Origin: Octopus bimaculoides
Taxonomy: Eukaryota
Reading direction: 5' to 3'
Length of the DNA: 64,000 nucleotides
NCBI RefSeq assembly: GCF_001194135.2
Contig: NC_068985.1
Span: forward strand, 21,973,425 to 22,037,424
Shown: piece by piece, positions 8,625-53,512 of the stretch
Layout: each line of letters starts with the position of its first letter
Numbering within the stretch: the first letter of the stretch is position 1
Notes under the pieces: model-generated
The model's database searches: none
What the model was told of the DNA's origin: nothing
The model's input: only the letters and a program-made list of their open reading frames with translations
Translations under genes and position numbers: made by a program

Positions 8625-9498
8625 TATACAGATGTTTGTATAATATGCTTGATATGTTCCTATTCATAGTTGAATTTGATTTGCATAAGTAGCTGGATAA
8701 TAGCTTAACAAATAAAGAAGTATTTTTAATTTATTCAAAAAAAATTAAAATTGATTTTTATACATGGGAGAATATATGATAATATTAAATGCATATTAAT
8801 CATAATATTGATTTGATTATATATTAAATTTATTCTGAGCAACATGTAGTAAATATTAAATATCTGAAAGATTCGGGAAATTTCTTGGCTATGAAAATGA
8901 TTTTCAAAGTTTATGCATTACACATATCAGTTAATTTCATTGTTAAATAATTAATGCTAAATATGCAAGTTATTTTCGTATGCATATATATAAATATGTA
9001 TATGTTTGTGAGCATCTACTAATATATAATCAAACATTCAAACCCATTTCTATATTTGAATATATATCAATATACAAGTGTGTGTGTGTGTGTGAATCAA
9101 TACCACTTAAATTCATTGATTAAACATACTGTATTCATCTTCATATAAAGCTTGTGATATTTTTCTTTACACTAATGATAATGATGATTAGCATTCTCAT
9201 CATCATTTTTATGTCCACTTTTTCCATGCTAGCATGGGTTGGATGAAACTTCTTGAGACAGTATTGTGTGGTTAGATGCACTGCCCAACATCAATCTTTA
9301 CTTATTTTCACTGGTCTTTTGTATATGAAACCACCAAAATTTAGGACACAAAAAAATGTTACTATCACCCAAGAAATTTTATTGCAAAGATATGCTAAGA
9401 TAAGCACACACACATGAATGTACCAACCACCTAAGGCTCTTTTACCCACAAGAGAAGCTACAGGAGGAAAGCCTACACTTCTTATTTCTTTTTTTTAA

Positions 9499-9718
9499 TT
9501 TCTTTATTTCCCACAAGGGGCTAAACATAGACGGAACAAACAAGGACAGACAAAGGGATTAAGTCGATTACATCGACCCCAGTGCAACTGGTACTTAATT
9601 TATCGACCCCGAAAGGATGAAAGGCAAAGTCGACCTCGGCGGAATTTGAACTCAGAACATAGCAGCAGACGAAATACCGCTAAGCATTTCGCCCGGCGTG
9701 CTAACGTTTCTGCCAGCC
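9499..9718 (-). mobile_element. tRNA-derived SINE, young copy (central domain GACTTTGCCTTTCATCCTTTCGGGGTCGATAAATTAAGTACC)
   Basis: A-box-like TGGCAGAAACG, B-box-like GAGTTCAAATTCC, CpGs retained, A-rich tail. Confidence 0.85.
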
Positions 9719-16471: not shown

Positions 16472-17100
16472 ATCATCATCATCATCATCATCATCGTTTA
16501 ACGTCCGCTTTCCATGCTAGCATGGGTTGGACGATTTGACTGAGGACTGGTGAAACCGGATGGCAACACCAGGCTCCAGTCTGATTTGGCAGAGTTTCTA
16601 CAGCTGGATGCCCTTCCTAACGCCAACCACTCAGAGAGTGTAGTGGGTGCTTTTACGTGTCACCCGCACGAAAACGGCCACGCTCGAAATGGTGTCTTTT
16701 ATGTGCCACCCGCACAANNNNNNNNNNNNNNNNNNNNNNNNNNNNNNNNNNNNNNNNNNNNNNNNNNNNNNNNNNNNNNNNNNNNNNNNNNNNNNNNNNN
16801 NNNNNNNNNNNNNNNNNNNNAAGCCAGTCCAGGGGCACTGGCAACGATCTCGCTCGAAAATCCTACAGGAGCCAGTCAGGCGGTACTGGCAACGGCCACG
16901 CTCAAAATGGTGCATCTCATGTGCCACCCGCACAAGAACCAGTCCAGGGGCACTGGCAACGATCTTACTTGGCTTGCCGGGTCTTCTCACGCACAGCCCA
17001 TTTCCAAAGGTCTCGGTCCGTAGTCATCGCCTCGGTGAGGCCCAATGTCATCGCCTCGGTGAGGCCCAATGTAGTCATCGCCTCGGTGAGGCCCAATGTG
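16472..17100 (-). mobile_element. Young 5'-truncated RTE LINE copy (ORF end, repetitive 3' UTR, (GAT)n tail)
   Basis: Minus strand encodes LGLTEAMT...DRDLWKWAVREKTRQAK*. CpGs are retained. Possible 7-bp TSD TGGAGAT at 16467-16473 and 17099-17105. N gap inside the element. Confidence 0.85.
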
Positions 17101-22403: not shown

Positions 22404-22623
22404 GTTGCCAGTACCATCTGACTGGCCTTTGTGCCGGTGGCACGTAAAAGTACCCACTACACTCTCGGAGTGGTTGGCATTAGGAAGGGCATCCAGCTGT
22501 AGAAACTCTGCCAAACCAGATTGGAGCCTGGTGTAGCTATCTGGTTCACCAGTCCTCAGTCAAATCGTCCAACCCATGCTAGCATGGAAAGCGGACGTTA
22601 AACGATGATGATGATGATGATGA
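22404..22623 (+). mobile_element. RTE 3'-tail-only insertion
   Basis: Nearly identical to the tail of the 16.5 kb LINE copy; ends in (GAT)n. Others at about 560-650, 8240-8400, 9190-9310, 23843-24022, 27730-27930, 50345-50560, 52960-53200. Confidence 0.85.
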
Positions 22624-23200: not shown

Positions 23201-24043
23201 TATATATTCTACTTTAATCTGGAGAGAGAATCCCTAGATGCTATTAGAGGCTGTAATTTTCTAAATTTCTAGCCAACATGAAACCTAGATATTAAGCTAT
23301 AACTTGCTATCACTGGAACAAATTGTGCCATTTAGGTTATAGAATATATACGCTACTTCCAGCAATCTCTTTGAAGAGAACTTTGATAATTAAAACCATT
23401 TATTACATAAACTAAATTAAATAAATATATAGAATGGTGAAATTGACAAGATGAATTTTCAAAATCTATTTATCTAAGAAAGATTTTTTTCAAAGTAGAA
23501 AACTATATTAATGATATGCCTTGCCTTCAACTTGTTGATGGAGTAGCAAGGATATTGTCATGATGTATGACATTCTTAGATATTTTTTCTTTGAATTCAA
23601 AAAGCCCATTCCCCTCCAGGTCTGACTACAGCTGATTTCTTCCAGAAGAGAAGAAGAAAAGAACCAACCCCAGTACATGACTGGTACTTTATATATCAAC
23701 TCTGAAAGGATGAAAGGCAAAGTTGACCTCGGTGGAATTTGAACTCAGAGCACAGGAGCCAGAATGATAACCACAAAACAAGCTACCCAGAGGTGTAATG
23801 ACTGTCTATCAGCCACCATATCAATATACATGTGTGTGTGTGTAGCACCCACTACACTTTCAGAGTGGTTGGCGTTAGGTAGGGCATCCAGATGTAGAAA
23901 CTCTGCCAAATGAGACTGGAGCCTGGCATAGCCATCTGGTTTTCCAGTCCTCAGTCAAATCATCCAACCCATGCTAGCATGGAAAGCGGACGTTAAACAA
24001 TGATGATGATAATGATGATGATATGTATATGTATATGTATATG

Positions 24044-27488: not shown

Positions 27489-28365
27489 ATCTAGACAAAT
27501 CCCAGAGTATAAGAAAAAGGTTCTTCCCTAACAACACACAGGGCACATGGACTCTGCAAGCCACAGTAAAGCTAACCCATCTAGGTGAGAAGTAACTTCA
27601 AAGAAAAACTGCTATAAGACAAAGATAACTATTTAGTCTTGTCACATACAACTGCTCTAAAGTTCTTAGCTTGATAAACCAATCCATGCTGTTAAATGGT
27701 TGGTGATAGGAAGGTACCCAGCCATGTATGCATCAACATTTAATGTCTGTTTTCCATGCTGGCATGGGTTGGATGGGTTGACAGGGACTGGTCAGGTCAA
27801 GAGCTGCACCAGGTCCCATTGCCTGCTGTGACATGGTTTTTATAGTTGGATACCCTTCCTAACACCAACCACTCTATAGAGTGTACTGGGTGCTTTTTAT
27901 GTGGCACCAACACCCATGCTAATGCTTTTTTTATGTGGCATCTTGGTTCCAGGATCTCAATCATCCACAAAAAAAAAAAAAATGTGACATGTGCAACAAC
28001 AAATGTTGGTGATTTCTTTGCTGCTGTGCTTGGTAGATGATAAAAGACTGTTGACAAGTTGTAAGACGTTGTGAGACACGCCAGCATTGAAAATTGAATG
28101 TTAAATGATGATGGTGATAATGGCGGTGGTGATGGCAGTAGTGATGGCGGTGGTGATGGCAGTAGTGATAGTGGTGGTGGTGGTGGTGGTGGTGGTGAGT
28201 TGCAGCACTTTTCAAATTTTCCGAAACCATGAACAGCTTTGGTAATAAAACACTCAAGCAGAAGAAACCTTTTTAATTGAAAAGTACATTTCATCCGTTT
28301 AATTTTGGTAAGACTTTTATATAGAGAACTTCATGAAATAAAATTCTTACTTTGACACATCAAAG

Positions 28366-33588: not shown

Positions 33589-33621
<33 letters not shown>

Positions 33622-34481
33622 TTAATGTCCATTTCCCACCCTGACATGGGTTGAACAGTTTGACAAGAGCTAGCCAGCTGGAGGGCTGCCCATGCTTCAA
33701 CCATCTGTTTTGGCATGGTTTCCTATGGCTTGATGCCCTTCCTAATGCCAACCACTTTACAGAGTATACTGGAAGCTTTATGCATGACACTGACACAGGT
33801 GCTCTTTATGTGGCCCCAAACATGTTCTTTTATATATGGCCCTGAATGGGTACTTTTCTACATGATACTGGTATGGGTGTTCTTTATGTGGCACAATCAT
33901 GAGTGCTTTTTATATGGTGCCAGCACAGGTGCTTATTATGTAGAACCAGCATCTGTAAGTCAACAATGCAAGGACTTCTTGGCTGAGAGAGTCACATTCT
34001 TGTATGTATAGATGACCATGATTTTACCTAGCTTAACATGTCTTCTCATCTACAGCAAATTGCCAGAAGTCTTGCTCTCTTGCCTTCTCCTCAGTGAGGC
34101 ACAATGTCTGAAGATCCTTTTTCATCACTTCTTCCTGAGTCTAACCCTTCCACATGTTCCCTTCACAATTAGAGATTGATACTTATTTATGCAATTGTCC
34201 TCATCTGTATGCATCACATGACCATATTACCACAGTCATCTGATGCCTCTTATACCCAATTTTTTTCTAAAATCATTAACACTCTGTTGTACATGCACAC
34301 TAACATTACCCATCCAGTGGAACATAATGACTTCATTTCTTTCAAGTCTTTGCATGTTCTCTTTATTCACAGCCCATGTCTTACTACCATATAGCATAGT
34401 TGTTTGTACACAGGCATCAAACAATCTGTTCTATATTTAAGAGATGAGGAATTATGTACATTATTTACATTATTTACATTT

Positions 34482-34491
34482 NNNNNNNNNN
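34482..34491. other. Assembly gap flanked by an exact 168-bp duplication
   Basis: 34314-34481 equals 34492-34659. Other gaps: 16718-16820, 18809-19126, 53625-54009, 55304-55364. Confidence 0.95.
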
Positions 34492-34691
34492 CCAGTGGAA
34501 CATAATGACTTCATTTCTTTCAAGTCTTTGCATGTTCTCTTTATTCACAGCCCATGTCTTACTACCATATAGCATAGTTGTTTGTACACAGGCATCAAAC
34601 AATCTGTTCTATATTTAAGAGATGAGGAATTATGTACATTATTTACATTATTTACATTTGACGGATATTTGTCCTCATCTTGTTTGTTGTT

Positions 34692-34737
34692 AACACAACG
34701 TTTTAGCTGATATACCTTCCAGCCTTCATCAGGTGTC
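34692..34737 (-). ncRNA. Minimal hammerhead motif with G12-to-A core lesion
   Basis: Minus strand reads GACAC CUGAUGA A GGCUG GAAGGUAUAU CAGCU AAAA CG UU GUGUU. Stem I GACAC/GUGUU and stem II GGCUG/CAGCU form, but GAAA reads AAAA. Confidence 0.6.
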
Positions 34738-34770
34738 TTGGGGAAATTTTGAACCTGGGTTAGAACCCAC

Positions 34771-34841
34771 GGGCATACGACATAGTGGTTAAGAGCGCAG
34801 GCTACTAACCCCAAGATTCCGAATTCGATTCCAGGCAGAGA

Positions 34842-34843
<2 letters not shown>
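34771..34843 (+). promoter_or_regulatory. tRNA-derived Pol III internal promoter (A/B boxes); SINE head, not a functional tRNA
   Basis: GGGCATACGACATAGTGGTTAAGAGCGC (A-box/D-arm-like) followed by GAATTCGATTCC (B-box/T-arm-like), then (AAT)n. Confidence 0.7.
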
Positions 34844-34898
<55 letters not shown>

Positions 34899-34950
34899 CA
34901 ACATTGAAAAACTACCTTATGAATGAGAACCCAGGTTTGAAATTTTCCCA

Positions 34951-34991
34951 AGACTGAAGGCTGGAGGGTATATCAGCTGAAACGTTGTGTT
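34951..34991 (+). ncRNA. Minimal hammerhead motif with a 6-nt deletion through CUGAUGA
   Basis: Reads AGAC-UGAA GGCUG GAGGGUAUAU CAGCU GAAA CG UU GUGUU. Relative to the other arm, ACCTGA is missing while GAAA is intact. Confidence 0.55.
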
Positions 34992-35298
34992 GACAACAAA
35001 GATGAGGACAAATATCCATCAAATGTCAATGATGTAGATAATGTATCAAACAATCTGTCTTTCACTGTGAGGGAGAATCCATTTGTTACCAACAAAGATA
35101 GCAACTCTCTGAACTTTGTCCAGCCTGTTTTTATTCTAGCAATTATGTTTCCAGAGCTTCCTCCTCCACTGCTAACTTGGTCACTTAGGTAATGGAAACT
35201 ATCTTCTATTTCTGAGGATCTCCCCAGATATTTGAGGGAGTCTATTTACACAAATACATACACACACACAAACACACACATGTGAATTTATGTGTGTA

Positions 35299-36165
35299 CA
35301 GGGTCTGATCTATAAGTATCTGGACTGTTGCTATAGTAACAAAGCTAAAGCACGAAGAGTGATGCTGCTTGGCACAGATTGACCTTGAACTCTGTTGTAC
35401 TTGCACACTAAGTTTTAACATTCTAGCTCACTTCCGTTGTTTATAGCAGTACTTGGAAGGAAGGTGTGTAGCGTGTGATCATCACATTGACCATGACAGA
35501 GAAAGTTGAGCAGAGAATCTGCATCAAATTTTGCCAAAAGCTTGGCAATACCTGCTCAGAGGCCTATGCAAAGTTTTCAAAACACAATCAAGGAAATCTT
35601 GTTCAACTGAAACCCAAGTGTCTTTTTGGTCAGCTGAAAGCAGTTTTGGCACAAACTTGGCAAATACTTGTCTCATACCTAAATCTTCAGTGATAATGGA
35701 CTGAACTGAAGTGTAACTAATCAGCTCATCTTCTGATAACTCACGGATGGTGATTCAATGATTTCCCCTCACAGCTGCACGCACATCTGCAATATTTTTT
35801 TCAGTTCTGCTGTTTGTGCATCTCCTAGAATGTTCGTCAACATCGACATTTTTTTTGACTATCTTGGAAATGTCTCAACCACTCGTACACTTGCGTGCAG
35901 CTCATACATTCCTTTCCATACACTTTCTGCAACTTTTTGTAGGCCTCTGAGCAGGCATCGCTATGACAACTTTCTCTGTGATGGTCAATGTGATGATCAC
36001 ACACTACACACCTTCCTTCCAAGTACTGCTGTAAACAGCAGAAGTGAGCTAGAATGTTAAAACTTAGTGTGCATGCACAGCAAAGTTCAACATCAATGGC
36101 TTTACTCTGCATGCTTTAGCTTCATTACTATGCCAACAGTATGGATATTTATTAATCAGATCTCG
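35299..36165. mobile_element. Non-autonomous mariner derivative made of two left ends in inverted orientation
   Basis: TA on both sides. Arms of about 280 bp are inverted. Plus arm encodes MTEKVEQRICIKFCQKLG; minus arm encodes CSEAYKKLQKVYGKECMSCTQVYEW and continues to AKFVPKLLSADQK. Confidence 0.85.
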
Positions 36166-36869: not shown

Positions 36870-37620
36870 ATGTACTTTGGATATTAAGGTCCATGTTTCT
36901 TGAGCATATATTATGATAAGGAGAACAAAACTTTGAGCTGCTGGCTGGTACCTCTTACTTCTTCCAGATCATGTTTCTTAGTCTTTCAAAATGCTATAGA
37001 TGCCAGAGCAACCTGTTTTTTCACATTCTCTGATCCACTTTGTAGTATACTGCCAAGAAATAACTCTTTGATGTATTATACTTCAGAATCATCAAGTGCA
37101 ATAATTTTTTAGCTAGATGTCAAGATGCTGCATTTTGTAACAATTATTTCATACCATATTTTTTACATGCTTCATGTCTCCACGTTTTTATCTCTCATAA
37201 GAATTGAAAAAGTAGTTGAAAAGACTGGAGGATAGCATTTAACCTTGTTCAGACCCATCAGACCAATATATCACTTGACCATCTATGACCATAGTACATT
37301 CAGTACTGTTATATAGTGCCTCTATAATTTACTCATAGGGTCTACACATATTGTTCCCCCACCCGACCATCTTCCATGGAGCCTTCTTCTAAATCCTATC
37401 AAAGGTAACTTTTAAAGTCAATGAAACTGAAATGTATAAAAGAACTTGATGTCCTTTTGCTTTTTCAATTATCTGTTTGACTATAAAAAGGGTATTGACT
37501 GTACCTCTGCCGGGTCTAAAATTGAATTGGTTCTCTCTTAATAGTTCTTTTGGTTTTACTTTAATTTTGTCAAGAAGGATTCTATTGAAAACTTTTCCTG
37601 GTATTGACAAGAAGGAAATT
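36870..37620 (-). mobile_element. RTE-clade reverse transcriptase relic
   Basis: MSIPGKVFNRILLDKI...LRENQFNFRPGRGTVNTLFIVKQIIEKAK (RT N-terminal domains), followed by degenerate QG-LSP and FLGS...VKKQVALAS segments. Confidence 0.9.
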
Positions 37621-37848
37621 TCCTTTGGTTTCTCCGTTTCATATATTCAAGTTATCTGCATATGGGTTCAGCCAGTTGGAGTCTTCTTTGTTTTTCATGC
37701 TATGTTAGATAATATGTGTAAACATATTAACCATGTGCTGTTTACTGTTCTCCTGCTGTTGACATCTTGCGTTTGCAATATTTGGGGCTAATAGCCCGTA
37801 AGGTGCCCTTCTAGAGCAGATGTACTCATTCTCAACTGAGTGAACATG

Positions 37849-42879: not shown

Positions 42880-43400
42880 AGGCATATACAGGATCATCAG
42901 TTGTCTTGCGTGATGTTGTGTGCGAGTCAAAATATATGAGATTATTGTGACAGAATAATTAAGATTAGGCTAGTCATAGGCTCATAGGCAACATTACTAT
43001 AGTTGTTATCTCTGCTTATGTGCCACAAACAGGACTGACAGATGAGCGAAAGGGCTGTTTCTATGAGACTTTCCTAGAGACTCCATTGATCATAAATGAC
43101 AGAGACTTCCTAAACATGGCTGGTGAGGTTTTATAGACATACTGAACAGTAACAAGGTAGCTACTCCAGTGTATATGTCTACAAATGAGAAGGGATCGAG
43201 GCTCTGTTGTGCAAATGACCCAACCATTTGCAATGCTAATTTCAGAATATCAGTCAGCTTCTTGATCACCCGCCAATCTGATGAACACATGAAGAAAATA
43301 AATTTCATTCTCATCAAGAAACAGAACAGACAAGTAGTTGTGAACATTCAACTTTAACAGAAGTGTCTTTTAGCAGACAGGATGATCACAGATAGGATGG
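42880..43400 (+). mobile_element. APE endonuclease relic of an RTE LINE
   Basis: DRIIKIRLV...ISAYVPQTGLTDERKGCFYE...AGE...NEKGSRL...ICNANFR...INFIL follows the APE motif order (SAYAPQ, GDFN, N-G-RL, NT-F, IDYIL). Confidence 0.85.
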
Positions 43401-44159: not shown

Positions 44160-44710
44160 ATAATGTGCATGAATGATGAAACAGAAATGAACTGGAAGAA
44201 AGATTAGGTATAAAAGGCATCAAATGTGGTGTACCATAGGGAAGACATTGAAGGAATGGACATATAATGTGAATGGATAATGATAAATGTGTAAAGAAGT
44301 GTCATAAAATCCAAGTGGAAAGTAACTGTAGAAGAGAAAGACTAAGAAAAAAATCAGGCAGAAATGGTGCAAAGTTGTTTCAGGAGGATCACTATCACAA
44401 AAATGATAAAGGAACACAACATGCTGTGTTGAAGAAGATCTGTCAAACTCATAGCACCTGTGTTGGCACCATGTGAAAAGCACCTGTGCTGATGTCACAT
44501 AAAAAGCACCAGCACTGGCACCATGTGAAAAGCACCCAGTACACTCTATCAAGTGATGGACATTTGGAAAAGTATTCAGCCATAGAAACCATGCCAAAAC
44601 AGATGACTGGAGCCTGGTGCATCCCTGCAGCTGGCCAGCACTTGTCAAGCTCATCAACTCATGCCAGCTTGAAAACTGAACATTAAATGATGATGATGAC
44701 AATGATGACA

Positions 44711-48925: not shown

Positions 48926-49772
48926 ATGAGGTGGGTGAAAAAATAGATTGGAAAATGAAACAAACTTTTTTGTACGTATGCCTAAAATACAGTACTTGAA
49001 CTTTTGGTTATGCATCCAACATGAGAGCAAGCAGGTATCAAACTGCTGAGTAGCCAATAAAAATTTTAAAAACTGATTAGGAGATTGCTGATGTTAATTG
49101 CATTAAGCACTTTGATTGGTCAACCATTTTCATGTTTGAAATCCAAGGCAAGCACTCAGAAATGGTTTTTTATTTGTTAAAAAAAGTTAGGCCTGGAAAT
49201 TCTTCAATACTGAAAATGGTCTTATTCTACTCTGCATTAAACAGCAATTGCTGTGTATTTACAAGCTTTTTCACTCTCATCCATTATTATAAATTGTTTT
49301 TAAAATTTTTTTAGGGAACATTATAAAGAGTTATGTTTTTGAAAGAAAAAAGGATTACTGTAAAAGTATTACTATTGTTACAGTGCATTCAAATGAACTG
49401 TGCTGTGCATTCTTATTTAAATATATTTACACACGGCTTGTGTATATCATATATGTACTTACCTTTAGTGTACAGCATGCAAGCAGATTTTTACATTAGG
49501 TTTTGGGGTAAAAAAAAGTCATCTTATACACAAAATACACAAAAAACAAAAAAAAAAAAGATATATATATATGGTTGTGTGTGTGCGTGTGTGTGCATAT
49601 ATATATATATATATATAATTATGTTTATTTCTTCTATCTTAATGAATAAAAATTCTTCTGATAGAATAAATGGGTTAATAGAAACCAATGTAGCAAAGAA
49701 CACAAAATAACTGTGGTTAGCTCCTGTTTTTAAGGCAGGAACTCCTTGAAATTTTGGGTGTTTGAGTATATT

Positions 49773-49997
49773 TAAGAATTTAAGGATTGGAGAAAACGCA
49801 TGTTATAATTGCATACTTTATTCCTACATATGTTTCAAAGGATTACAACCTGTGTGATCCATGCTTTCCCTGATGAGAAGGTTACAATTTTAATATCAAA
49901 GATCCCTATGGATCACACAGGTTGTAATCCTTTGAAACACATGTAGGAATAAAGTATGCAATTATAACATGCGTTTTCTCCAATCCTTAAATTCTTA
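49773..49997. mobile_element. Fold-back element with 90-bp inverted arms, carrying the hammerhead; likely PLE-related non-autonomous element
   Basis: 49773-49862 is the reverse complement of 49908-49997 with one mismatch. Spacer is 45 bp and contains CTGATGA. AATAAA lies at 49948-49953 and a (TA)n tract follows the right end. Confidence 0.75.
49860..49958 (+). ncRNA. Type I hammerhead ribozyme, core apparently intact
   Basis: Folded by hand. Core CUGAUGA at 49870-49876 and GAAA at 49934-49937. Stem II: GAAGG-UUACAA (49877-49887) pairs with UUGUAA-U-CCUUU (49922-49933), with an inner GAUCC/GGAUC hairpin. Stem III: A-U and C-G closing loop ACAU. Cleavage triplet GUA at 49943-49945. Stem I: UUCC/GGAA, a UAA bulge, then CAUGCU/AGUAUG. 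Confidence 0.8.
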
Positions 49998-51255
49998 TAT
50001 ATATATATATATATATACATATATATATGTGGTTGTGTATATAAAGTTACATTTCCAGTATACCCTTTGCTGTTTTAATATGCTAGTGTGTGATTTAAGA
50101 GAAATTTTAGCTTTTCTTTGTTCAGTACACAAAAACTTGTGTGTGTGTGTGTACGCACATGTGTGTGCGTGTGCAACTATGTACACGTCCCCATTTAGGT
50201 ATCATAACAAAAATTATCATTGGATTCTATCACCATTGCTGTATTATGACTCTTACTTCTTATGTCTACGATCAAGACACTTAGGCCTCAAATGGTGAAA
50301 TTTAGCACTTAGCTGTAAAGAAATATCTATCTACTAGTATAAATATCATCAGCATCATTTGACATCCATGTTTCATGTAGGCATGGGTTGGATGGTTTGA
50401 CGGGATCTGATGAACCCAAGGACTGCATCATGTTTCAGTGTCTGCTGTGGAATGGTTTCTATGGCTGGATGCCCTTCCAAATGCCAACCATTATGCAGCA
50501 TGTACTGAATGCTTTTCCCATGGCACCAGCACTGTTGAGGTTACCATGCAACTTGCAGGACTACAAACTCAGTAGAAGCAGTAGGGACTTTATACTAGGA
50601 GAATAATGAGTACAGAGAGATAAAGTATAAGAGAAAAGGGTCAAACCGGAACAGGTTTCTTGCTGTAGAGAAGCTACATGACTAGTTACATTTTAGAGAA
50701 GAGGAAGCTGGAAACTAATAAAAAAGTGGTTGGGTTTGATTATTCTTTAAGCATAGACTGAAGAAAGATTTGTTATTGTAAGCTGACTAGGTACAATACA
50801 TGGAAACCACATGAGCAGAGTACTCTTTATTACTATCATATATGCAAACATCACATTACAGGCATACACATTCACCACATCAATCACATTTTGAAAGAAC
50901 TAAATATCACTTAGAAAGTGACAGCTATCAGCAATAACAGTGGAGAGAGGCGATTCTTTCTATCTGTTGGGTCTTCGTTTATTTGAAGCAGCTCAAGTTT
51001 GAGTGTTTGCTTCCAGACAATACAAAACAGTTATTGGCAATGAACTAGAACAATTTTGCAGATAAAAGCATTACCTGCTGTAGCAAATATGACATCACAA
51101 TGCAAATAAAAACTGCAGTAATTATTCTTTACTCCCATACACAGTAAACCTATGGTGACAGACTGCTGATATTTTAAAGGAGAGTATGAACGACCCTCAA
51201 GTACATCCTGTCTAGCAAAATGACAGTAAGATTTCTTTGTAGACATTGCATTCTC

Positions 51256-51299
<44 letters not shown>

Positions 51300-53512
51300 T
51301 ACATACATACACATACATATGCACTCACAAGAATATACATATAGATAAACATATAAATATCTACGTTATGAATTTGTGTGTACACACATCTGTATGTATA
51401 TACACATGTAGAGACAGGTAGGTAGAAATAAATAGCTGTAAATGAAACTGCACATGCATATATAAATATTTAAATGTCAATGTATACACATATGCATGTG
51501 TGTGTGTGCATGCATGCATTTGTACATGTTTACATATACATTCATGCAGACATGTAGACATATACATTCATGCAGACATACAGCCATGCAAATATCAAGC
51601 ATACAAACATACACAGTGGAGGATATATCACTGTGGACAAGTGAGATTAAGCTTATGGAAACATAAGAACTTGAGAAAAAGATACCTCATTGAGTATACA
51701 TTTAAATGATTTGCCAAGGGCATAATTGAAGTGGAACAAAGAATGCTTGTTATTGATTAAGGTTCATACAAAAGGTCAGCAAGACAAGTCTGATCCAAAT
51801 AAGCAAAGAATATAATTACAATGATAATAAGAATAAAAATGTTGCAGGAGAAACTACAAAAGGTTAGGTCATAGAAGTGACTGTAATGGCTACCAGATAG
51901 CTAGGTTTGAAAATTAGAGTTGTCAGTGTGCAATTTGGTTCTGTATGAGGGTGTGAAACTATGCTAGCTGTACTCCTAATAAAATAACTGCATGAGTAAC
52001 ATTGCACTAACAGCAAATAATTGAATTCTGTTTTGGTCATTCAAGACAATGCATTTGATTCCCATGTCATTGAGCCAGTGAGAAAGGCTTTCTGATTTTG
52101 TTTCTCTTTAAATGTAGAAGTCAGAAGGGGATTGTATAGATAAAACAGACACATAATTTCTGAGACTTCATGTGAAGATGGGAAAGAAAAAAGAAAGGTG
52201 ACAGTCAGATCACCAAGAAAGAAACATAGGCTAGGTTGTGATAGAAAACTATAGCAACTGTGGGGGGTGGGATGGAGGTGGTGCTGACAATGCAATCACA
52301 AATCTTCAAGCAAAAGTAGATTACATGAAATATATATAGTAGAGTAGAGAAGCAAGCAAGAATAAAATTTATTGAAGCATTAACATTTCCTGTCAATGAA
52401 AGTGTCAGAATACATCAGGTATGATATAATAAATAAATAAATAAATAAATAAGAAAAAAATCATCATTATTATCATCATCGCCATCATTACCATCACTGT
52501 TATCATCATTCACAACAACAATAACAGCGACAATGATTTATAAGCACAGCAGATGACAATATGGGTACAGTGGTATACAAAGTGCCTTGTAGTGTTTAGT
52601 TACATTCATTTGGTTATGTCTGTGATCAAATCCCGTAGGAATTGGCTTTGCCTTTTATTTTCAAGGGTTGATAAAATAAGTACCAGTAAAGTACTGGGGT
52701 TCAATTTAATTGACTATACTCTCATAGAATACATGACCTTGTACTAATAGATGAAATCATCAATTATCATCATTATTATTAAAAACAAAAATGTGGTTAG
52801 TTGGCAGAATTCTTGGAATATTGATCCAAAATGTCATACAATAATTAGTTACATTCCTTTATATTCTGAGCTGAAATTCCATTGAGGTCAACTTTGTATT
52901 TCATCATTATGGGGTCAATAAAATAAAATACCTCTCAAGTGTTAGGGCCAACTATACCATAATCCTCGTTATCACCATTTAACATCTATTTTCTATATTG
53001 GCATGAGTTAGATGGTTCAACAGAAGCTGGCAAGCCAGAGAATTGTAGCTTGCTCCATTATCTGTTTTGGCATGGTTTCTACGGCTGGATGCCTATCCCA
53101 ATGCCAACCACATGACAATGTATCCTGAGTGTATTTTACATGACACCAGCACCAGTGAGGCCACCTGGTAATTCACAAACAAGACCCTCCAACAGAAGTG
53201 GGGGAGTAGTATTGAGGGAGATGACTTTGTGTCAAATGATGTGAGGTTAAAGTATGATCTTTACAAAAATATCCGTGGCTTTGTGCCAATGTTAGAAGTC
53301 TTTAGTATAATTCATAAGGTGGATACAATAATTTTTCTGTAGGGATTGATACAATTGTTTACATTCCTCCTTCCAAATTTTCCAGTCTTGTGCCTACACT
53401 AGAAACTGGTATTTCTATTATTATATTAATAAGTTGTAGTGCACCTGAGCACTGTATACAATAATTTCATTCATTATTATATTATTATATATCCCATTTC
53501 CAAAGTCAATAC

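What the first reader, a model, noticed from the sequence alone, without database searches (positions are those of the whole stretch)
49860..49958. Apparently intact type I hammerhead ribozyme hidden in what looks like a MITE
Seen: every conserved core position is present (CUGAUGA, GAAA, A15.1-U16.1, GUA triplet) and three stems fold. Stem I carries a UAA bulge, stem II is unusually long with its own hairpin, and AATAAA directly follows the cleavage site. Established: type I HHRs occur in Penelope-like elements, in retrozymes and in schistosome Sm-alpha repeats, and short stem III forms often cleave as dimers. Inference: this is a catalytically competent HHR of a non-autonomous family. Caveats: the 10.1-11.1 pair is G-U and stem III has only 2 bp.
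Basis: partly seen in the sequence, partly recalled or inferred. Interest (0 to 1): 0.9.

Follow-up and report, generated by a model that had tools for sequence, protein, structure and literature searches.

The report
Atypical hammerhead ribozyme motif in octopus repeat
The stretch carries a complete, statistically non-random hammerhead self-cleaving-RNA motif with an unusually long second helix, lying across one half of a 237-bp inverted repeat in an octopus genome; it is probably a relic of a mobile repeat family, and it is not shown to be an active ribozyme or a true MITE.

Summary

**Not chance.**
- Random sequence would give a match this good about 0.2 times per octopus-sized genome.
- None of 719 composition-matched decoy motifs gave a comparable hit in 104.8 kb of octopus DNA.
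- A second, independent motif of the same architecture turned up in 40.8 kb of Octopus vulgaris: 4-bp helix I, CUGAUGA, a 77-nt hairpin as helix II, GAAAC, weak helix III.

**Cautions.**
- No Rfam hammerhead model scores either motif.
- The 10.1-11.1 pair is G-U.
- Helix II spans 57 nt instead of about 13.
- There is no tandem partner.
- The 3' half lies in the right arm of a 96-nt, 98% inverted repeat, which would lock it into a -157 kcal/mol hairpin in any read-through transcript.
- No other copy of the element could be reached, so family conservation, the MITE label and activity are all untested.

**Best reading (about 0.6).** A genuine hammerhead-derived motif from a dispersed, probably Penelope-like or retrozyme-related repeat, likely crippled at this locus. 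A chance match remains possible (about 0.25).

It is a new variant of a known kind, of moderate interest.

The parts
49767..49862 (.). Left arm of the inverted repeat. It is the reverse complement of the right arm, so on the minus strand it carries a second GAAAC-AUAU-GUAGG half-motif, but no CUGAUGA.
   Evidence: 96 nt, 98% complementary; arm sequences occur only here, once per strand
49863..49907 (+). 45-nt centre between the arms. It holds most of the helix I 5' strand, the CUGAUGA box and the 5' strand of helix II.
   Evidence: Its resemblance to the left arm is not significant.
49908..50003 (.). Right arm of the inverted repeat. It holds the helix II 3' strand, GAAA, helix III, the cleavage site, the helix I 3' strand and a 50-nt tail that runs into (TA)n.
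49860..49869 (+). Helix I, 5' strand (6 distal and 4 core-proximal nucleotides)
49870..49876 (+). Core box C3-U-G-A-U-G-A9
49877..49933 (+). Helix II domain, 57 nt. It has 5 bp (G49877-U49933 is the 10.1-11.1 pair), a bulged U49928, 9 bp (49882-90 with 49919-27) and an inner hairpin (49901-05 with 49910-14).
49934..49937 (+). Core box G12-A13-A14-A15.1, followed by C15.2, so it fits GAAAY
49937..49944 (+). Helix III: 2 bp (A-U, C-G) capped by tetraloop ACAU. C49940 is one of the two arm mismatches. The left-arm version reads AUAU, which makes the 8-mer palindromic.
   Evidence: (alignment)
49945..49946 (+). Predicted scissile bond: A17 (A49945), then G1.1 (G49946)
   Evidence: Position follows from the hammerhead consensus (RUH). 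Cleavage itself was not tested.
49946..49958 (+). Helix I, 3' strand, with the UAA bulge at 49950-52. It contains AATAAA (49948-53), which is not significant.
49565..49617 (+). Left flanking microsatellites, (TA)n-TGGTTGTGT-(TG)n-(TA)n. They include the left copy of a 16-nt direct repeat, ATATATRTGGTTGTGT, at 49565-49580.
   Evidence: the only two exact matches in the window
49996..50038 (+). Right flanking (TA)n, with the right copy of the 16-nt direct repeat at 50023-50038

Best explanation
**What it is.** This is a genuine hammerhead-type (type I) self-cleaving motif of an atypical kind, with a very long hairpin as helix II. It was inherited from a short dispersed octopus repeat, most likely debris of a Penelope-like or retrozyme-like retroelement. 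In this copy the last 96 nt are also present as an inverted twin immediately upstream. That twin creates the 237-bp palindrome and the MITE look.

**How it would work.** This mechanism is inferred from the established hammerhead mechanism, not shown here.
1. In a transcript lacking the left arm, helices I, II and III bring CUGAUGA and GAAA together.
2. The 2'-OH of A49945 attacks the next phosphate.
3. This leaves a 2',3'-cyclic phosphate on A49945 and a 5'-OH on G49946.
4. In the parent element this would trim read-through or multimeric transcripts to unit length.

**At this locus.** The motif is probably inert, for three reasons:
- The left arm traps the 3' half in a 96-bp duplex.
- The 10.1-11.1 pair is G-U.
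- Helix III has 2 bp and no tandem partner to extend it.

A read-through transcript would instead be a long double-stranded hairpin.

**Shown versus inferred.** The motif, its statistical rarity, the second example and the inverted repeat are shown. Descent from a retroelement, the cleavage chemistry and inactivity here are inferred.
For: **Motif and chance**
- The full core and three helices are present.
- Random sequence gives 0.038 loose hits per Mb of strand. Only 0.10% of those are as stable in the hammerhead fold, at -17.9 kcal/mol. That is about 0.2 expected per 2.7-Gb genome; the genome size is from my own knowledge.
- On real octopus DNA, none of 719 permuted decoy box pairs gave a full hit with a long helix II, against 2 loci for the real boxes.
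- For boxes plus hairpin alone, 1.4% of decoys hit the independent 40.8 kb, and 0.14% gave two or more hits overall.
- Reversed sequence gave none. The real box is only 1.3-1.6 times commoner than the decoys.

**Second example**
- It is on the L005 minus strand, with C3 at 8292: uaac-CUGAUGA, a 13-bp G-C-closed helix II in a 77-nt hairpin, then GAAA-cacguu-U-C|guua. It is likewise flanked by microsatellites.

**Positive control**
- Validated coral, mussel and axolotl hammerheads have the same low nearest-neighbour probability of the hammerhead fold (4e-6 to 1.4e-3) as the candidate (1.5e-4).

**Literature**
- Metazoan type I hammerheads have a helix III of 1-2 bp. Those of Penelope-like elements have a helix I of 4-5 bp and an enlarged helix II, one variant has a bulge in mid helix II, most are solitary, and they vary greatly in sequence (PMC4209133).
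- Insertions of Penelope-like elements often carry an inverted 5'-truncated copy and favour microsatellites (PMC8557442).
- Penelope-like elements are abundant and recently active in O. vulgaris (PMC13282606).
- The host is an octopus.
Against: - No Rfam hammerhead family scores it, even at E<=10 in a 115-nt search. The L005 motif is missed too, so this shows distance from the curated families, not absence of a hammerhead.
- The G10.1-C11.1 pair, called highly conserved in PMC4209133, is G-U here.
- The stretch 15.2-loop 3-16.2 (CACAUG) is not palindromic in this arm.
- Helix II is about four times the usual length, so the usual loop 1-loop 2 contact cannot form.
- There is no tandem copy and no ORF of a Penelope-like element nearby.
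- The two octopus motifs share no sequence outside the core.
- No other copy of the element was available, so there is no conservation or covariation evidence at all.
- The descriptor that captures L005 was loosened after I had seen it. The decoys had the same loosened descriptor, but some post hoc inflation remains.
Confidence: 0.6

Rival explanations
1. This is a chance hammerhead look-alike. The element is an ordinary young palindromic repeat, either a MITE or foldback element or a local inverted duplication. A stretch of its centre happens to pair with the right arm on both sides of a fortuitous CUGAUGA, and the arm happens to read GAAAC-ACAU-GUA. Nothing is cleaved, and the only RNA-level behaviour is a long hairpin.
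For: - Rfam reports no hammerhead match.
- The motif departs from the conserved G10.1-C11.1 pair and from normal helix II size.
- It is single-copy and not tandem.
- The first 29 nt of the centre can be aligned collinearly with the left arm: CATGCT---TTCC--CTGATG..AAGG-TTACAA against CATACTTTATTCCTACATATG..AAGGATTACAA. The shuffle p is 0.018. This would explain helices I and II as by-products of a decayed arm copy.
- The minimum-energy fold of the isolated 99 nt pairs CUGAUG with CAU-GUAGG.
- PMC6155905 warns that relaxed minimal-motif searches give mostly false positives.
Against: - Random expectation for a match this good is about 0.2 per genome.
- None of 719 decoys gave a comparable hit on real octopus DNA.
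- The independent L005 motif has the same architecture.
- Over the whole centre the arm-copy similarity is not significant: p is 0.23 against shuffles and 0.13 against random pieces of the window.
- Validated hammerheads also fail to be the minimum-energy fold.
Confidence: 0.25
2. An active hammerhead is an integral part of a true MITE family moved by a DNA transposase. Every copy would then carry both terminal inverted repeats and the ribozyme.
For: - The 96-nt arms, the 237-bp size, the absence of an ORF and the TA-rich ends all fit a MITE.
- The outer 8 nt on each side (TATATTTA and TATATATA) could be read as an 8-bp target duplication.
- The L005 motif is itself a 110-nt hairpin unit lying between two exact copies of TTATTCTA.
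- Other inverted-repeat elements and a mariner-like fragment lie in the same window.
Against: - If every copy had both arms, the ribozyme could never fold: -157 kcal/mol for the hairpin against about -18 for the hammerhead fold, and a hammerhead share of 1e-41. Selection could then not maintain it.
- The target duplication cannot be told apart from the (TA)n flank.
- No second copy was found.
- The held literature describes no hammerhead in a DNA transposon.
Confidence: 0.12

Closest known systems
Canonical type I hammerheads of metazoan non-LTR retrozymes (coral, mussel, axolotl HHR_Amex2; Rfam Hammerhead_1)
   Same: - The strand order is the same: helix I 5' strand, CUGAUGA, helix II, GAAAY, a short helix III hairpin, RUH, helix I 3' strand.
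- The sequence context is low in G+C.
- Helix III has 2 bp plus a tetraloop and is followed by GUA, as in axolotl Ax353 (GAAACACGUGUA). That ribozyme also has a non-canonical 10.1-11.1 pair (U-U) and cleaves weakly as a monomer.
   Different: - Helix II is 57 nt (14 bp plus a bulge plus an inner hairpin) instead of 4 bp plus a 5-6-nt loop.
- No loop 1-loop 2 contact is possible.
- Helix I has 4 bp next to the core, not 6.
- It is not in a tandem array.
- The Rfam models do not score it.
Minimal and atypical hammerheads of Penelope-like elements (Cervera & de la Pena 2014, PMC4209133)
   Same: - Helix I is short (4-5 bp).
- Helix II is enlarged, and the D. virilis variant has a bulged nucleotide in mid helix II.
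- Copies are mostly solitary and vary greatly in sequence.
- The host genome is rich in Penelope-like elements.
- The inverted-copy arrangement and microsatellite flanks match how these elements insert (PMC8557442).
   Different: - No pseudo-LTR and no RT/GIY-YIG ORF lies nearby.
[quoted passage not shown]
- The 10.1-11.1 pair is G-U, not G-C.
- Helix II is far longer than the 6-8 bp reported.
- Helix III is present.
Miniature inverted-repeat or foldback elements
   Same: - It is 237 bp long, with near-perfect 96-nt inverted arms, no ORF and TA-rich ends.
- Its transcript would be a long hairpin. Rfam gives only weak matches to hairpin-type miRNA precursor models.
   Different: - No demonstrable target-site duplication.
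- No second copy.
- The termini do not match any transposon superfamily I can name.
Discontinuous hammerhead in rodent Clec2 3' UTRs (Martick et al. 2008; from my own knowledge, cited in PMC4209133)
   Same: It is an isolated, non-tandem genomic hammerhead that tolerates a large insertion in a peripheral element.
   Different: There the insertion separates the substrate and enzyme strands, not the two strands of helix II. That motif is conserved between species and its cleavage has been shown.

Membership tests
Hammerhead ribozyme (general) | Conserved boxes CUGANGA / GAAAY / RUH in type I order | tested here: met
   The boxes are at 49870-76, 49934-38 and 49943-45. The consensus is as stated in the supplement of PMC7229834.
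Hammerhead ribozyme (general) | Three helices around the core, with the A15.1-U16.1 pair | tested here: met
   Helix I has 4 bp, then a bulge, then 6 bp. Helix II has 5 bp, then a bulge, then 9 bp. Helix III has 2 bp. The constrained fold is -17.9 kcal/mol, which is the 0.1% tail of planted random hits.
Hammerhead ribozyme (general) | G10.1-C11.1 pair | tested here: not met
   The pair is G49877-U49933, a wobble. The left arm has the same base, so the change predates the duplication.
Hammerhead ribozyme (general) | Site-specific Mg2+-dependent self-cleavage | not testable with these tools
   This needs in vitro transcription.
Hammerhead ribozyme (general) | Conservation of the core and covariation of the helices among related copies | not testable with these tools
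   No other copy could be reached. A second, non-homologous octopus motif keeps the same boxes.
Rfam hammerhead families (Hammerhead_1, _3, _II, HH9, HH10) | Covariance-model score at or near the gathering threshold | tested here: not met
   There is no hammerhead match at gathering in 64 kb, nor at E<=10 in 401 nt or 115 nt.
Metazoan non-LTR retrozyme | Tandem repeats of 150-450 bp, each with one type I hammerhead | tested here: not met
   It is a single copy. No second copy occurs in the window.
Metazoan non-LTR retrozyme | Helix I of about 6 bp and helix II of about 4 bp, with loop 1-loop 2 tertiary contacts | tested here: not met
   Helix II spans 57 nt, so its loop lies far from helix I. 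A bulge-bulge contact cannot be assessed.
Hammerhead of Penelope-like elements | Lies in a pseudo-LTR next to an RT/GIY-YIG ORF | tested here: not met
   No such ORF lies near. The only RT domain in the window is a LINE-type fragment 12 kb away. Truncated copies would lack the ORF, so this is weak evidence.
Hammerhead of Penelope-like elements | Short helix I (4-5 bp) and enlarged helix II | tested here: met
   Shown. The family description is from PMC4209133.
Hammerhead of Penelope-like elements | [quoted passage not shown] | tested here: not met
   There is no extra nucleotide. CACAUG is not self-complementary, although the left-arm version CAUAUG is.
MITE | Terminal inverted repeats, small size, no ORF | tested here: met
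   The arms are 96 nt and 98% complementary, and the element is 237 bp. The longest ORF across it is 45 aa.
MITE | Target-site duplication | tested here: inconclusive
   The ends merge into TA repeats. Both TA and TATATNTA can be read as a duplication or as part of the inverted repeat.
MITE | Multiple dispersed copies | tested here: not met
   No copy occurs in 64 kb of the window or in 40.8 kb of O. vulgaris. Whole octopus genomes could not be searched.

The most novel reading that the evidence does not exclude
Octopus genomes may hold a large, undescribed class of short hairpin-shaped (MITE-like) non-autonomous elements. Each would carry an intact type I hammerhead whose helix II is a 55-80-nt hairpin. 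The curated hammerhead models and the usual RNAmotif descriptors would not see them. Such elements would either be moved by a route not yet linked to hammerheads, such as a DNA transposase, or be a new retrozyme design. [quoted passage not shown]
Probability: 0.25. Interest if true: 0.75.

Novelty: new variant of a known kind. Interest (0 to 1): 0.5.

Why it matters
Hammerhead motifs scattered through animal genomes are well known, in retrozymes and in Penelope-like elements.
- I found no description of them in cephalopods in the held literature.
- I also found none with a helix II this long.

If the two octopus motifs represent a family, three things would follow.
- The standard models and descriptors would be missing a whole class of genomic ribozymes.
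- The tolerated architecture of natural hammerheads would be wider than assumed.
- The palindromic setting would raise the question of which mobile element carries them.

If it is only a relic at this locus, it is an ordinary piece of repeat debris. Its main RNA-level property would be a 96-bp perfect hairpin, a likely substrate for double-strand-RNA pathways such as the A-to-I editing that is prominent in octopus. That last point is inference.

Tried and rejected
1. **Rfam at three search sizes.** No hammerhead match for the candidate. Only weak matches to hairpin-type miRNA precursor models appeared, and these reflect the palindrome, not homology.
2. **'The isolated RNA does not fold as a hammerhead'.** I first took this as evidence against. 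I dropped it after validated coral, mussel and axolotl ribozymes behaved the same way.
3. **'The centre is a decayed third copy of the arm'.** It is suggestive for the first 29 nt (p=0.018). It is not significant for the local alignment (p=0.29) or for the whole centre (p=0.13-0.23).
4. **Looking for other copies.**
   - BLAST within the window found none.
   - Two metagenome scans gave no hit, then three chance 21-mers with no further homology.
   - The viral and prokaryote-genome scans found nothing.
   - A protein-word search with the three-frame translation found nothing.
   - Exact ORF look-ups found nothing.
5. **Trying to reach more octopus DNA through repeat-derived proteins.**
   - Only two O. 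vulgaris loci were obtained.
   - The third protein search gave one O. bimaculoides protein with no contig on record.
6. **Allowing one core mismatch.** No further octopus motifs were found.
7. **Homology between the window unit and the L005 unit.** None: the 3' tails give p=0.055, and the upstream sequence and helix II are not significant.
8. **AATAAA as a signal.** Rejected, because it occurs about once per 448 nt.
9. **Assembly artefact.** I considered a palindrome with a 45-nt spacer. The spacer does not resemble the long-read or mate-pair adapter sequences as I remember them, and both arms continue into unique flanks. I did not pursue it.

Full report
**What is in the sequence**

- CUGAUGA is at 49870-76 and GAAA at 49934-37, followed by C, so it fits GAAAY.
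- Helix III has 2 bp (A49937-U49944, C49938-G49943) around ACAU. GUA ends at A49945.
- Helix I has 4 bp next to the core (49866-69 with 49946-49), a UAA bulge (49950-52) and 6 further bp.
- The helix II domain is 57 nt. It has 5 bp starting with G49877-U49933, a bulged U49928, 9 further bp and an inner GAUCC/GGAUC hairpin.
- AATAAA (49948-53) starts 2 nt after the putative cleavage site. It occurs 143 times on this strand of the window, so it means nothing.

**The setting**

The motif is not free-standing. Positions 49767-49862 and 49908-50003 are a 96-nt inverted repeat, 98% complementary, with a 45-nt centre.
- The helix II 3' strand, GAAA, helix III, the cleavage site and the helix I 3' strand all lie in the right arm.
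- The whole element folds into one hairpin of -157 kcal/mol, z = -27.7.
- As soon as the left arm is in the transcript, the equilibrium share of the hammerhead fold drops to 1e-19 to 1e-41.
- The arm sequences occur nowhere else in the window, so there is no tandem partner for a dimeric ribozyme.
- The unit is bounded by (TA)n and (TG)n microsatellites. An exact 16-nt direct repeat, ATATATRTGGTTGTGT, sits 458 bp apart on either side.

**Host**

The window has 33% G+C, is full of microsatellites and contains assembly gaps.
- The translation of its commonest interspersed repeat matches 'Hypothetical predicted protein [Octopus vulgaris]'.
- Two O. vulgaris loci fetched through those proteins share the window's repeats at 80-93% identity.
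- The host is therefore an octopus.

**Is it chance?**

I tested this several ways.
1. A type I descriptor (helix I of at least 4 bp, helix II of at least 4 bp with a span up to 80 nt, helix III of at least 2 bp, U16.1, non-G at 17) finds only this site in the window.
2. In 500 Mb of random sequence of the same composition the descriptor hits 19 times. That is 0.038 per Mb of strand, or 0.005 per window.
3. Among 145,000 planted random hits, only 0.10% reach the candidate's hammerhead-constrained energy of -17.9 kcal/mol. That gives roughly 0.2 such matches per 2.7-Gb genome (size from my own knowledge).
4. Real genomes have more hairpins than random sequence, so I also used 719 decoy box pairs on the 104.8 kb of octopus DNA in hand. 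The decoys are all permutations of CTGA-GA and of GAAA.
   - With the full descriptor and a helix II of at least 10 pairs, the real boxes give 2 loci and the decoys give none.
   - Reversed sequence gives none. The real box is only 1.3-1.6 times commoner than the decoys.

**A second, independent example**

The second locus is in O. vulgaris: L005, minus strand, with C3 at 8292.
- It reads uaac-CUGAUGA, then a 13-bp G-C-closed helix II inside a 77-nt hairpin, then GAAA-cacguu-U-C|guua.
- I fetched that locus for an unrelated reason.
- For boxes plus hairpin alone, only 1.4% of decoys score in those 40.8 kb.
- It has the same peculiar architecture as the candidate: a 4-bp helix I, a long hairpin as helix II and a weak helix III. 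It too is flanked by microsatellites.
- It shares no sequence with the candidate outside the core.
- I loosened helix III to 1 bp after seeing it. The decoys had the same freedom, but some post hoc inflation remains.

**Arguments that turned out weaker than they looked**
- The isolated 99-nt RNA does not have the hammerhead as its minimum-energy fold; the share is 1.5e-4. Treated identically, the experimentally active coral, mussel and axolotl retrozyme hammerheads give 4e-6 to 1.4e-3. Their sequences come from the supplement of PMC7229834. This is therefore not evidence against.
- The idea that the centre is a decayed copy of the arm, which would make helices I and II trivial, has only patchy support: p=0.018 for 29 nt, and 0.13-0.29 otherwise.

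**Arguments that stand against a canonical, active ribozyme**
- No Rfam hammerhead model scores the candidate, even at E<=10 in 115 nt. The same holds for the L005 motif.
- The 10.1-11.1 pair is G-U. PMC4209133 lists G10.1-C11.1 as highly conserved. However, the active axolotl Amex2 ribozyme has U-U there.
- Helix II is about four times the normal length, so the usual loop 1-loop 2 contact cannot form. The field uses that contact to accept bona fide motifs (PMC7229834 methods).
- The motif is not in a tandem array.
- The stretch 15.2-loop 3-16.2 is not palindromic in this arm.

**Comparison with known kinds**
- The 3' half, GAAAC-ACAU-GUA, is nearly identical in form to axolotl Ax353, GAAAC-ACGU-GUA.
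- Hammerheads of Penelope-like elements are described as follows (PMC4209133):
  - helix I has 4-5 bp;
  - helix II is enlarged, with a mid-helix bulge in D. virilis;
  - most copies are solitary;
  - the sequences are extremely variable.
- Insertions of these elements often carry an inverted 5'-truncated copy that forms an inverted repeat, and they favour microsatellites (PMC8557442).
- These elements are abundant and recently active in O. vulgaris (PMC13282606).
- On that reading, the centre plus right arm (141 nt) is the 3' end of a truncated copy, and the left arm is its shorter inverted twin.
- I could not confirm this. No ORF of such an element lies nearby, and no family consensus was available.
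- The MITE reading fits the shape. It lacks a demonstrable target duplication and a second copy. It would also leave the ribozyme permanently unable to fold.

**Verdict**
This is most likely a real hammerhead-derived motif of an atypical, long-helix-II kind from a dispersed octopus repeat (about 0.6). It is probably inert in this palindromic copy.
- A fortuitous match remains possible (about 0.25). An active ribozyme built into a true MITE family is the least likely reading (about 0.12).
- The decisive test is a nucleotide search of whole octopus genomes for copies and for decoy-controlled enrichment. It could not be run with the collections available.

Noticed in passing
L005 8195-8313 (minus strand), O. 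vulgaris GCA_951406725.2 OX597822.1: A second hammerhead-like type I motif lies here. It has a 13-bp G-C-closed helix II inside a 77-nt hairpin, a 4-bp helix I and a 1-bp helix III. It sits in a 110-nt unit between two exact copies of TTATTCTA, is flanked by (CA)n and (TA)n, and lies antisense within the range of a DIS3/Rrp44-like gene.
   Followed up: partly
window 49565-49580 and 50023-50038: These are the only two exact matches in the window to ATATATRTGGTTGTGT. They lie in direct orientation 458 bp apart and bracket the whole unit plus its (TA)n flanks. This could be a long target duplication or a microsatellite-mediated duplication.
   Followed up: partly
window 50345-50500, with further copies at 16484-16629, 22471-22615, 23866-24011, 27731-27871, 33608-33762, 44561-44699 and 52973-53110: A SINE-like interspersed repeat with at least 9 copies, 70-80% identical to one another. 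Its translation matches O. vulgaris 'hypothetical predicted proteins'. It contains a CTGATGA of its own, which partly explains the slight excess of that heptamer.
   Followed up: partly
window 35378-36097: An inverted-repeat element with 131-nt arms, 92% complementary. It encloses a mariner-type transposase N-terminal fragment (35527-35754, minus strand), so it looks like an internally deleted mariner-like element.
   Followed up: no
window 34239-35245: LINE reverse-transcriptase C-terminal fragments on the minus strand (34239-34430 and 34976-35245; identified by eye, no Pfam hit at E<=0.01). They are interrupted by a roughly 410-bp inverted-repeat element (arms about 34635-34728 and 34955-35045), a likely nested MITE insertion.
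   Followed up: no
window 37392-37646 (minus strand) and 42969-43133 (plus strand): Further retroelement debris. The first is an RVT_1 fragment (Pfam E=1.7e-5). The second is an endonuclease-like fragment.
   Followed up: partly
window 9498-9717: Another abundant repeat. It is 86-92% identical to at least six places in the two O. vulgaris loci.
   Followed up: no
window about 16.7 kb, 18.8 kb and 53.6 kb: Runs of N, 877 in total, each next to TA microsatellites. The window therefore comes from a scaffolded draft assembly.
   Followed up: no
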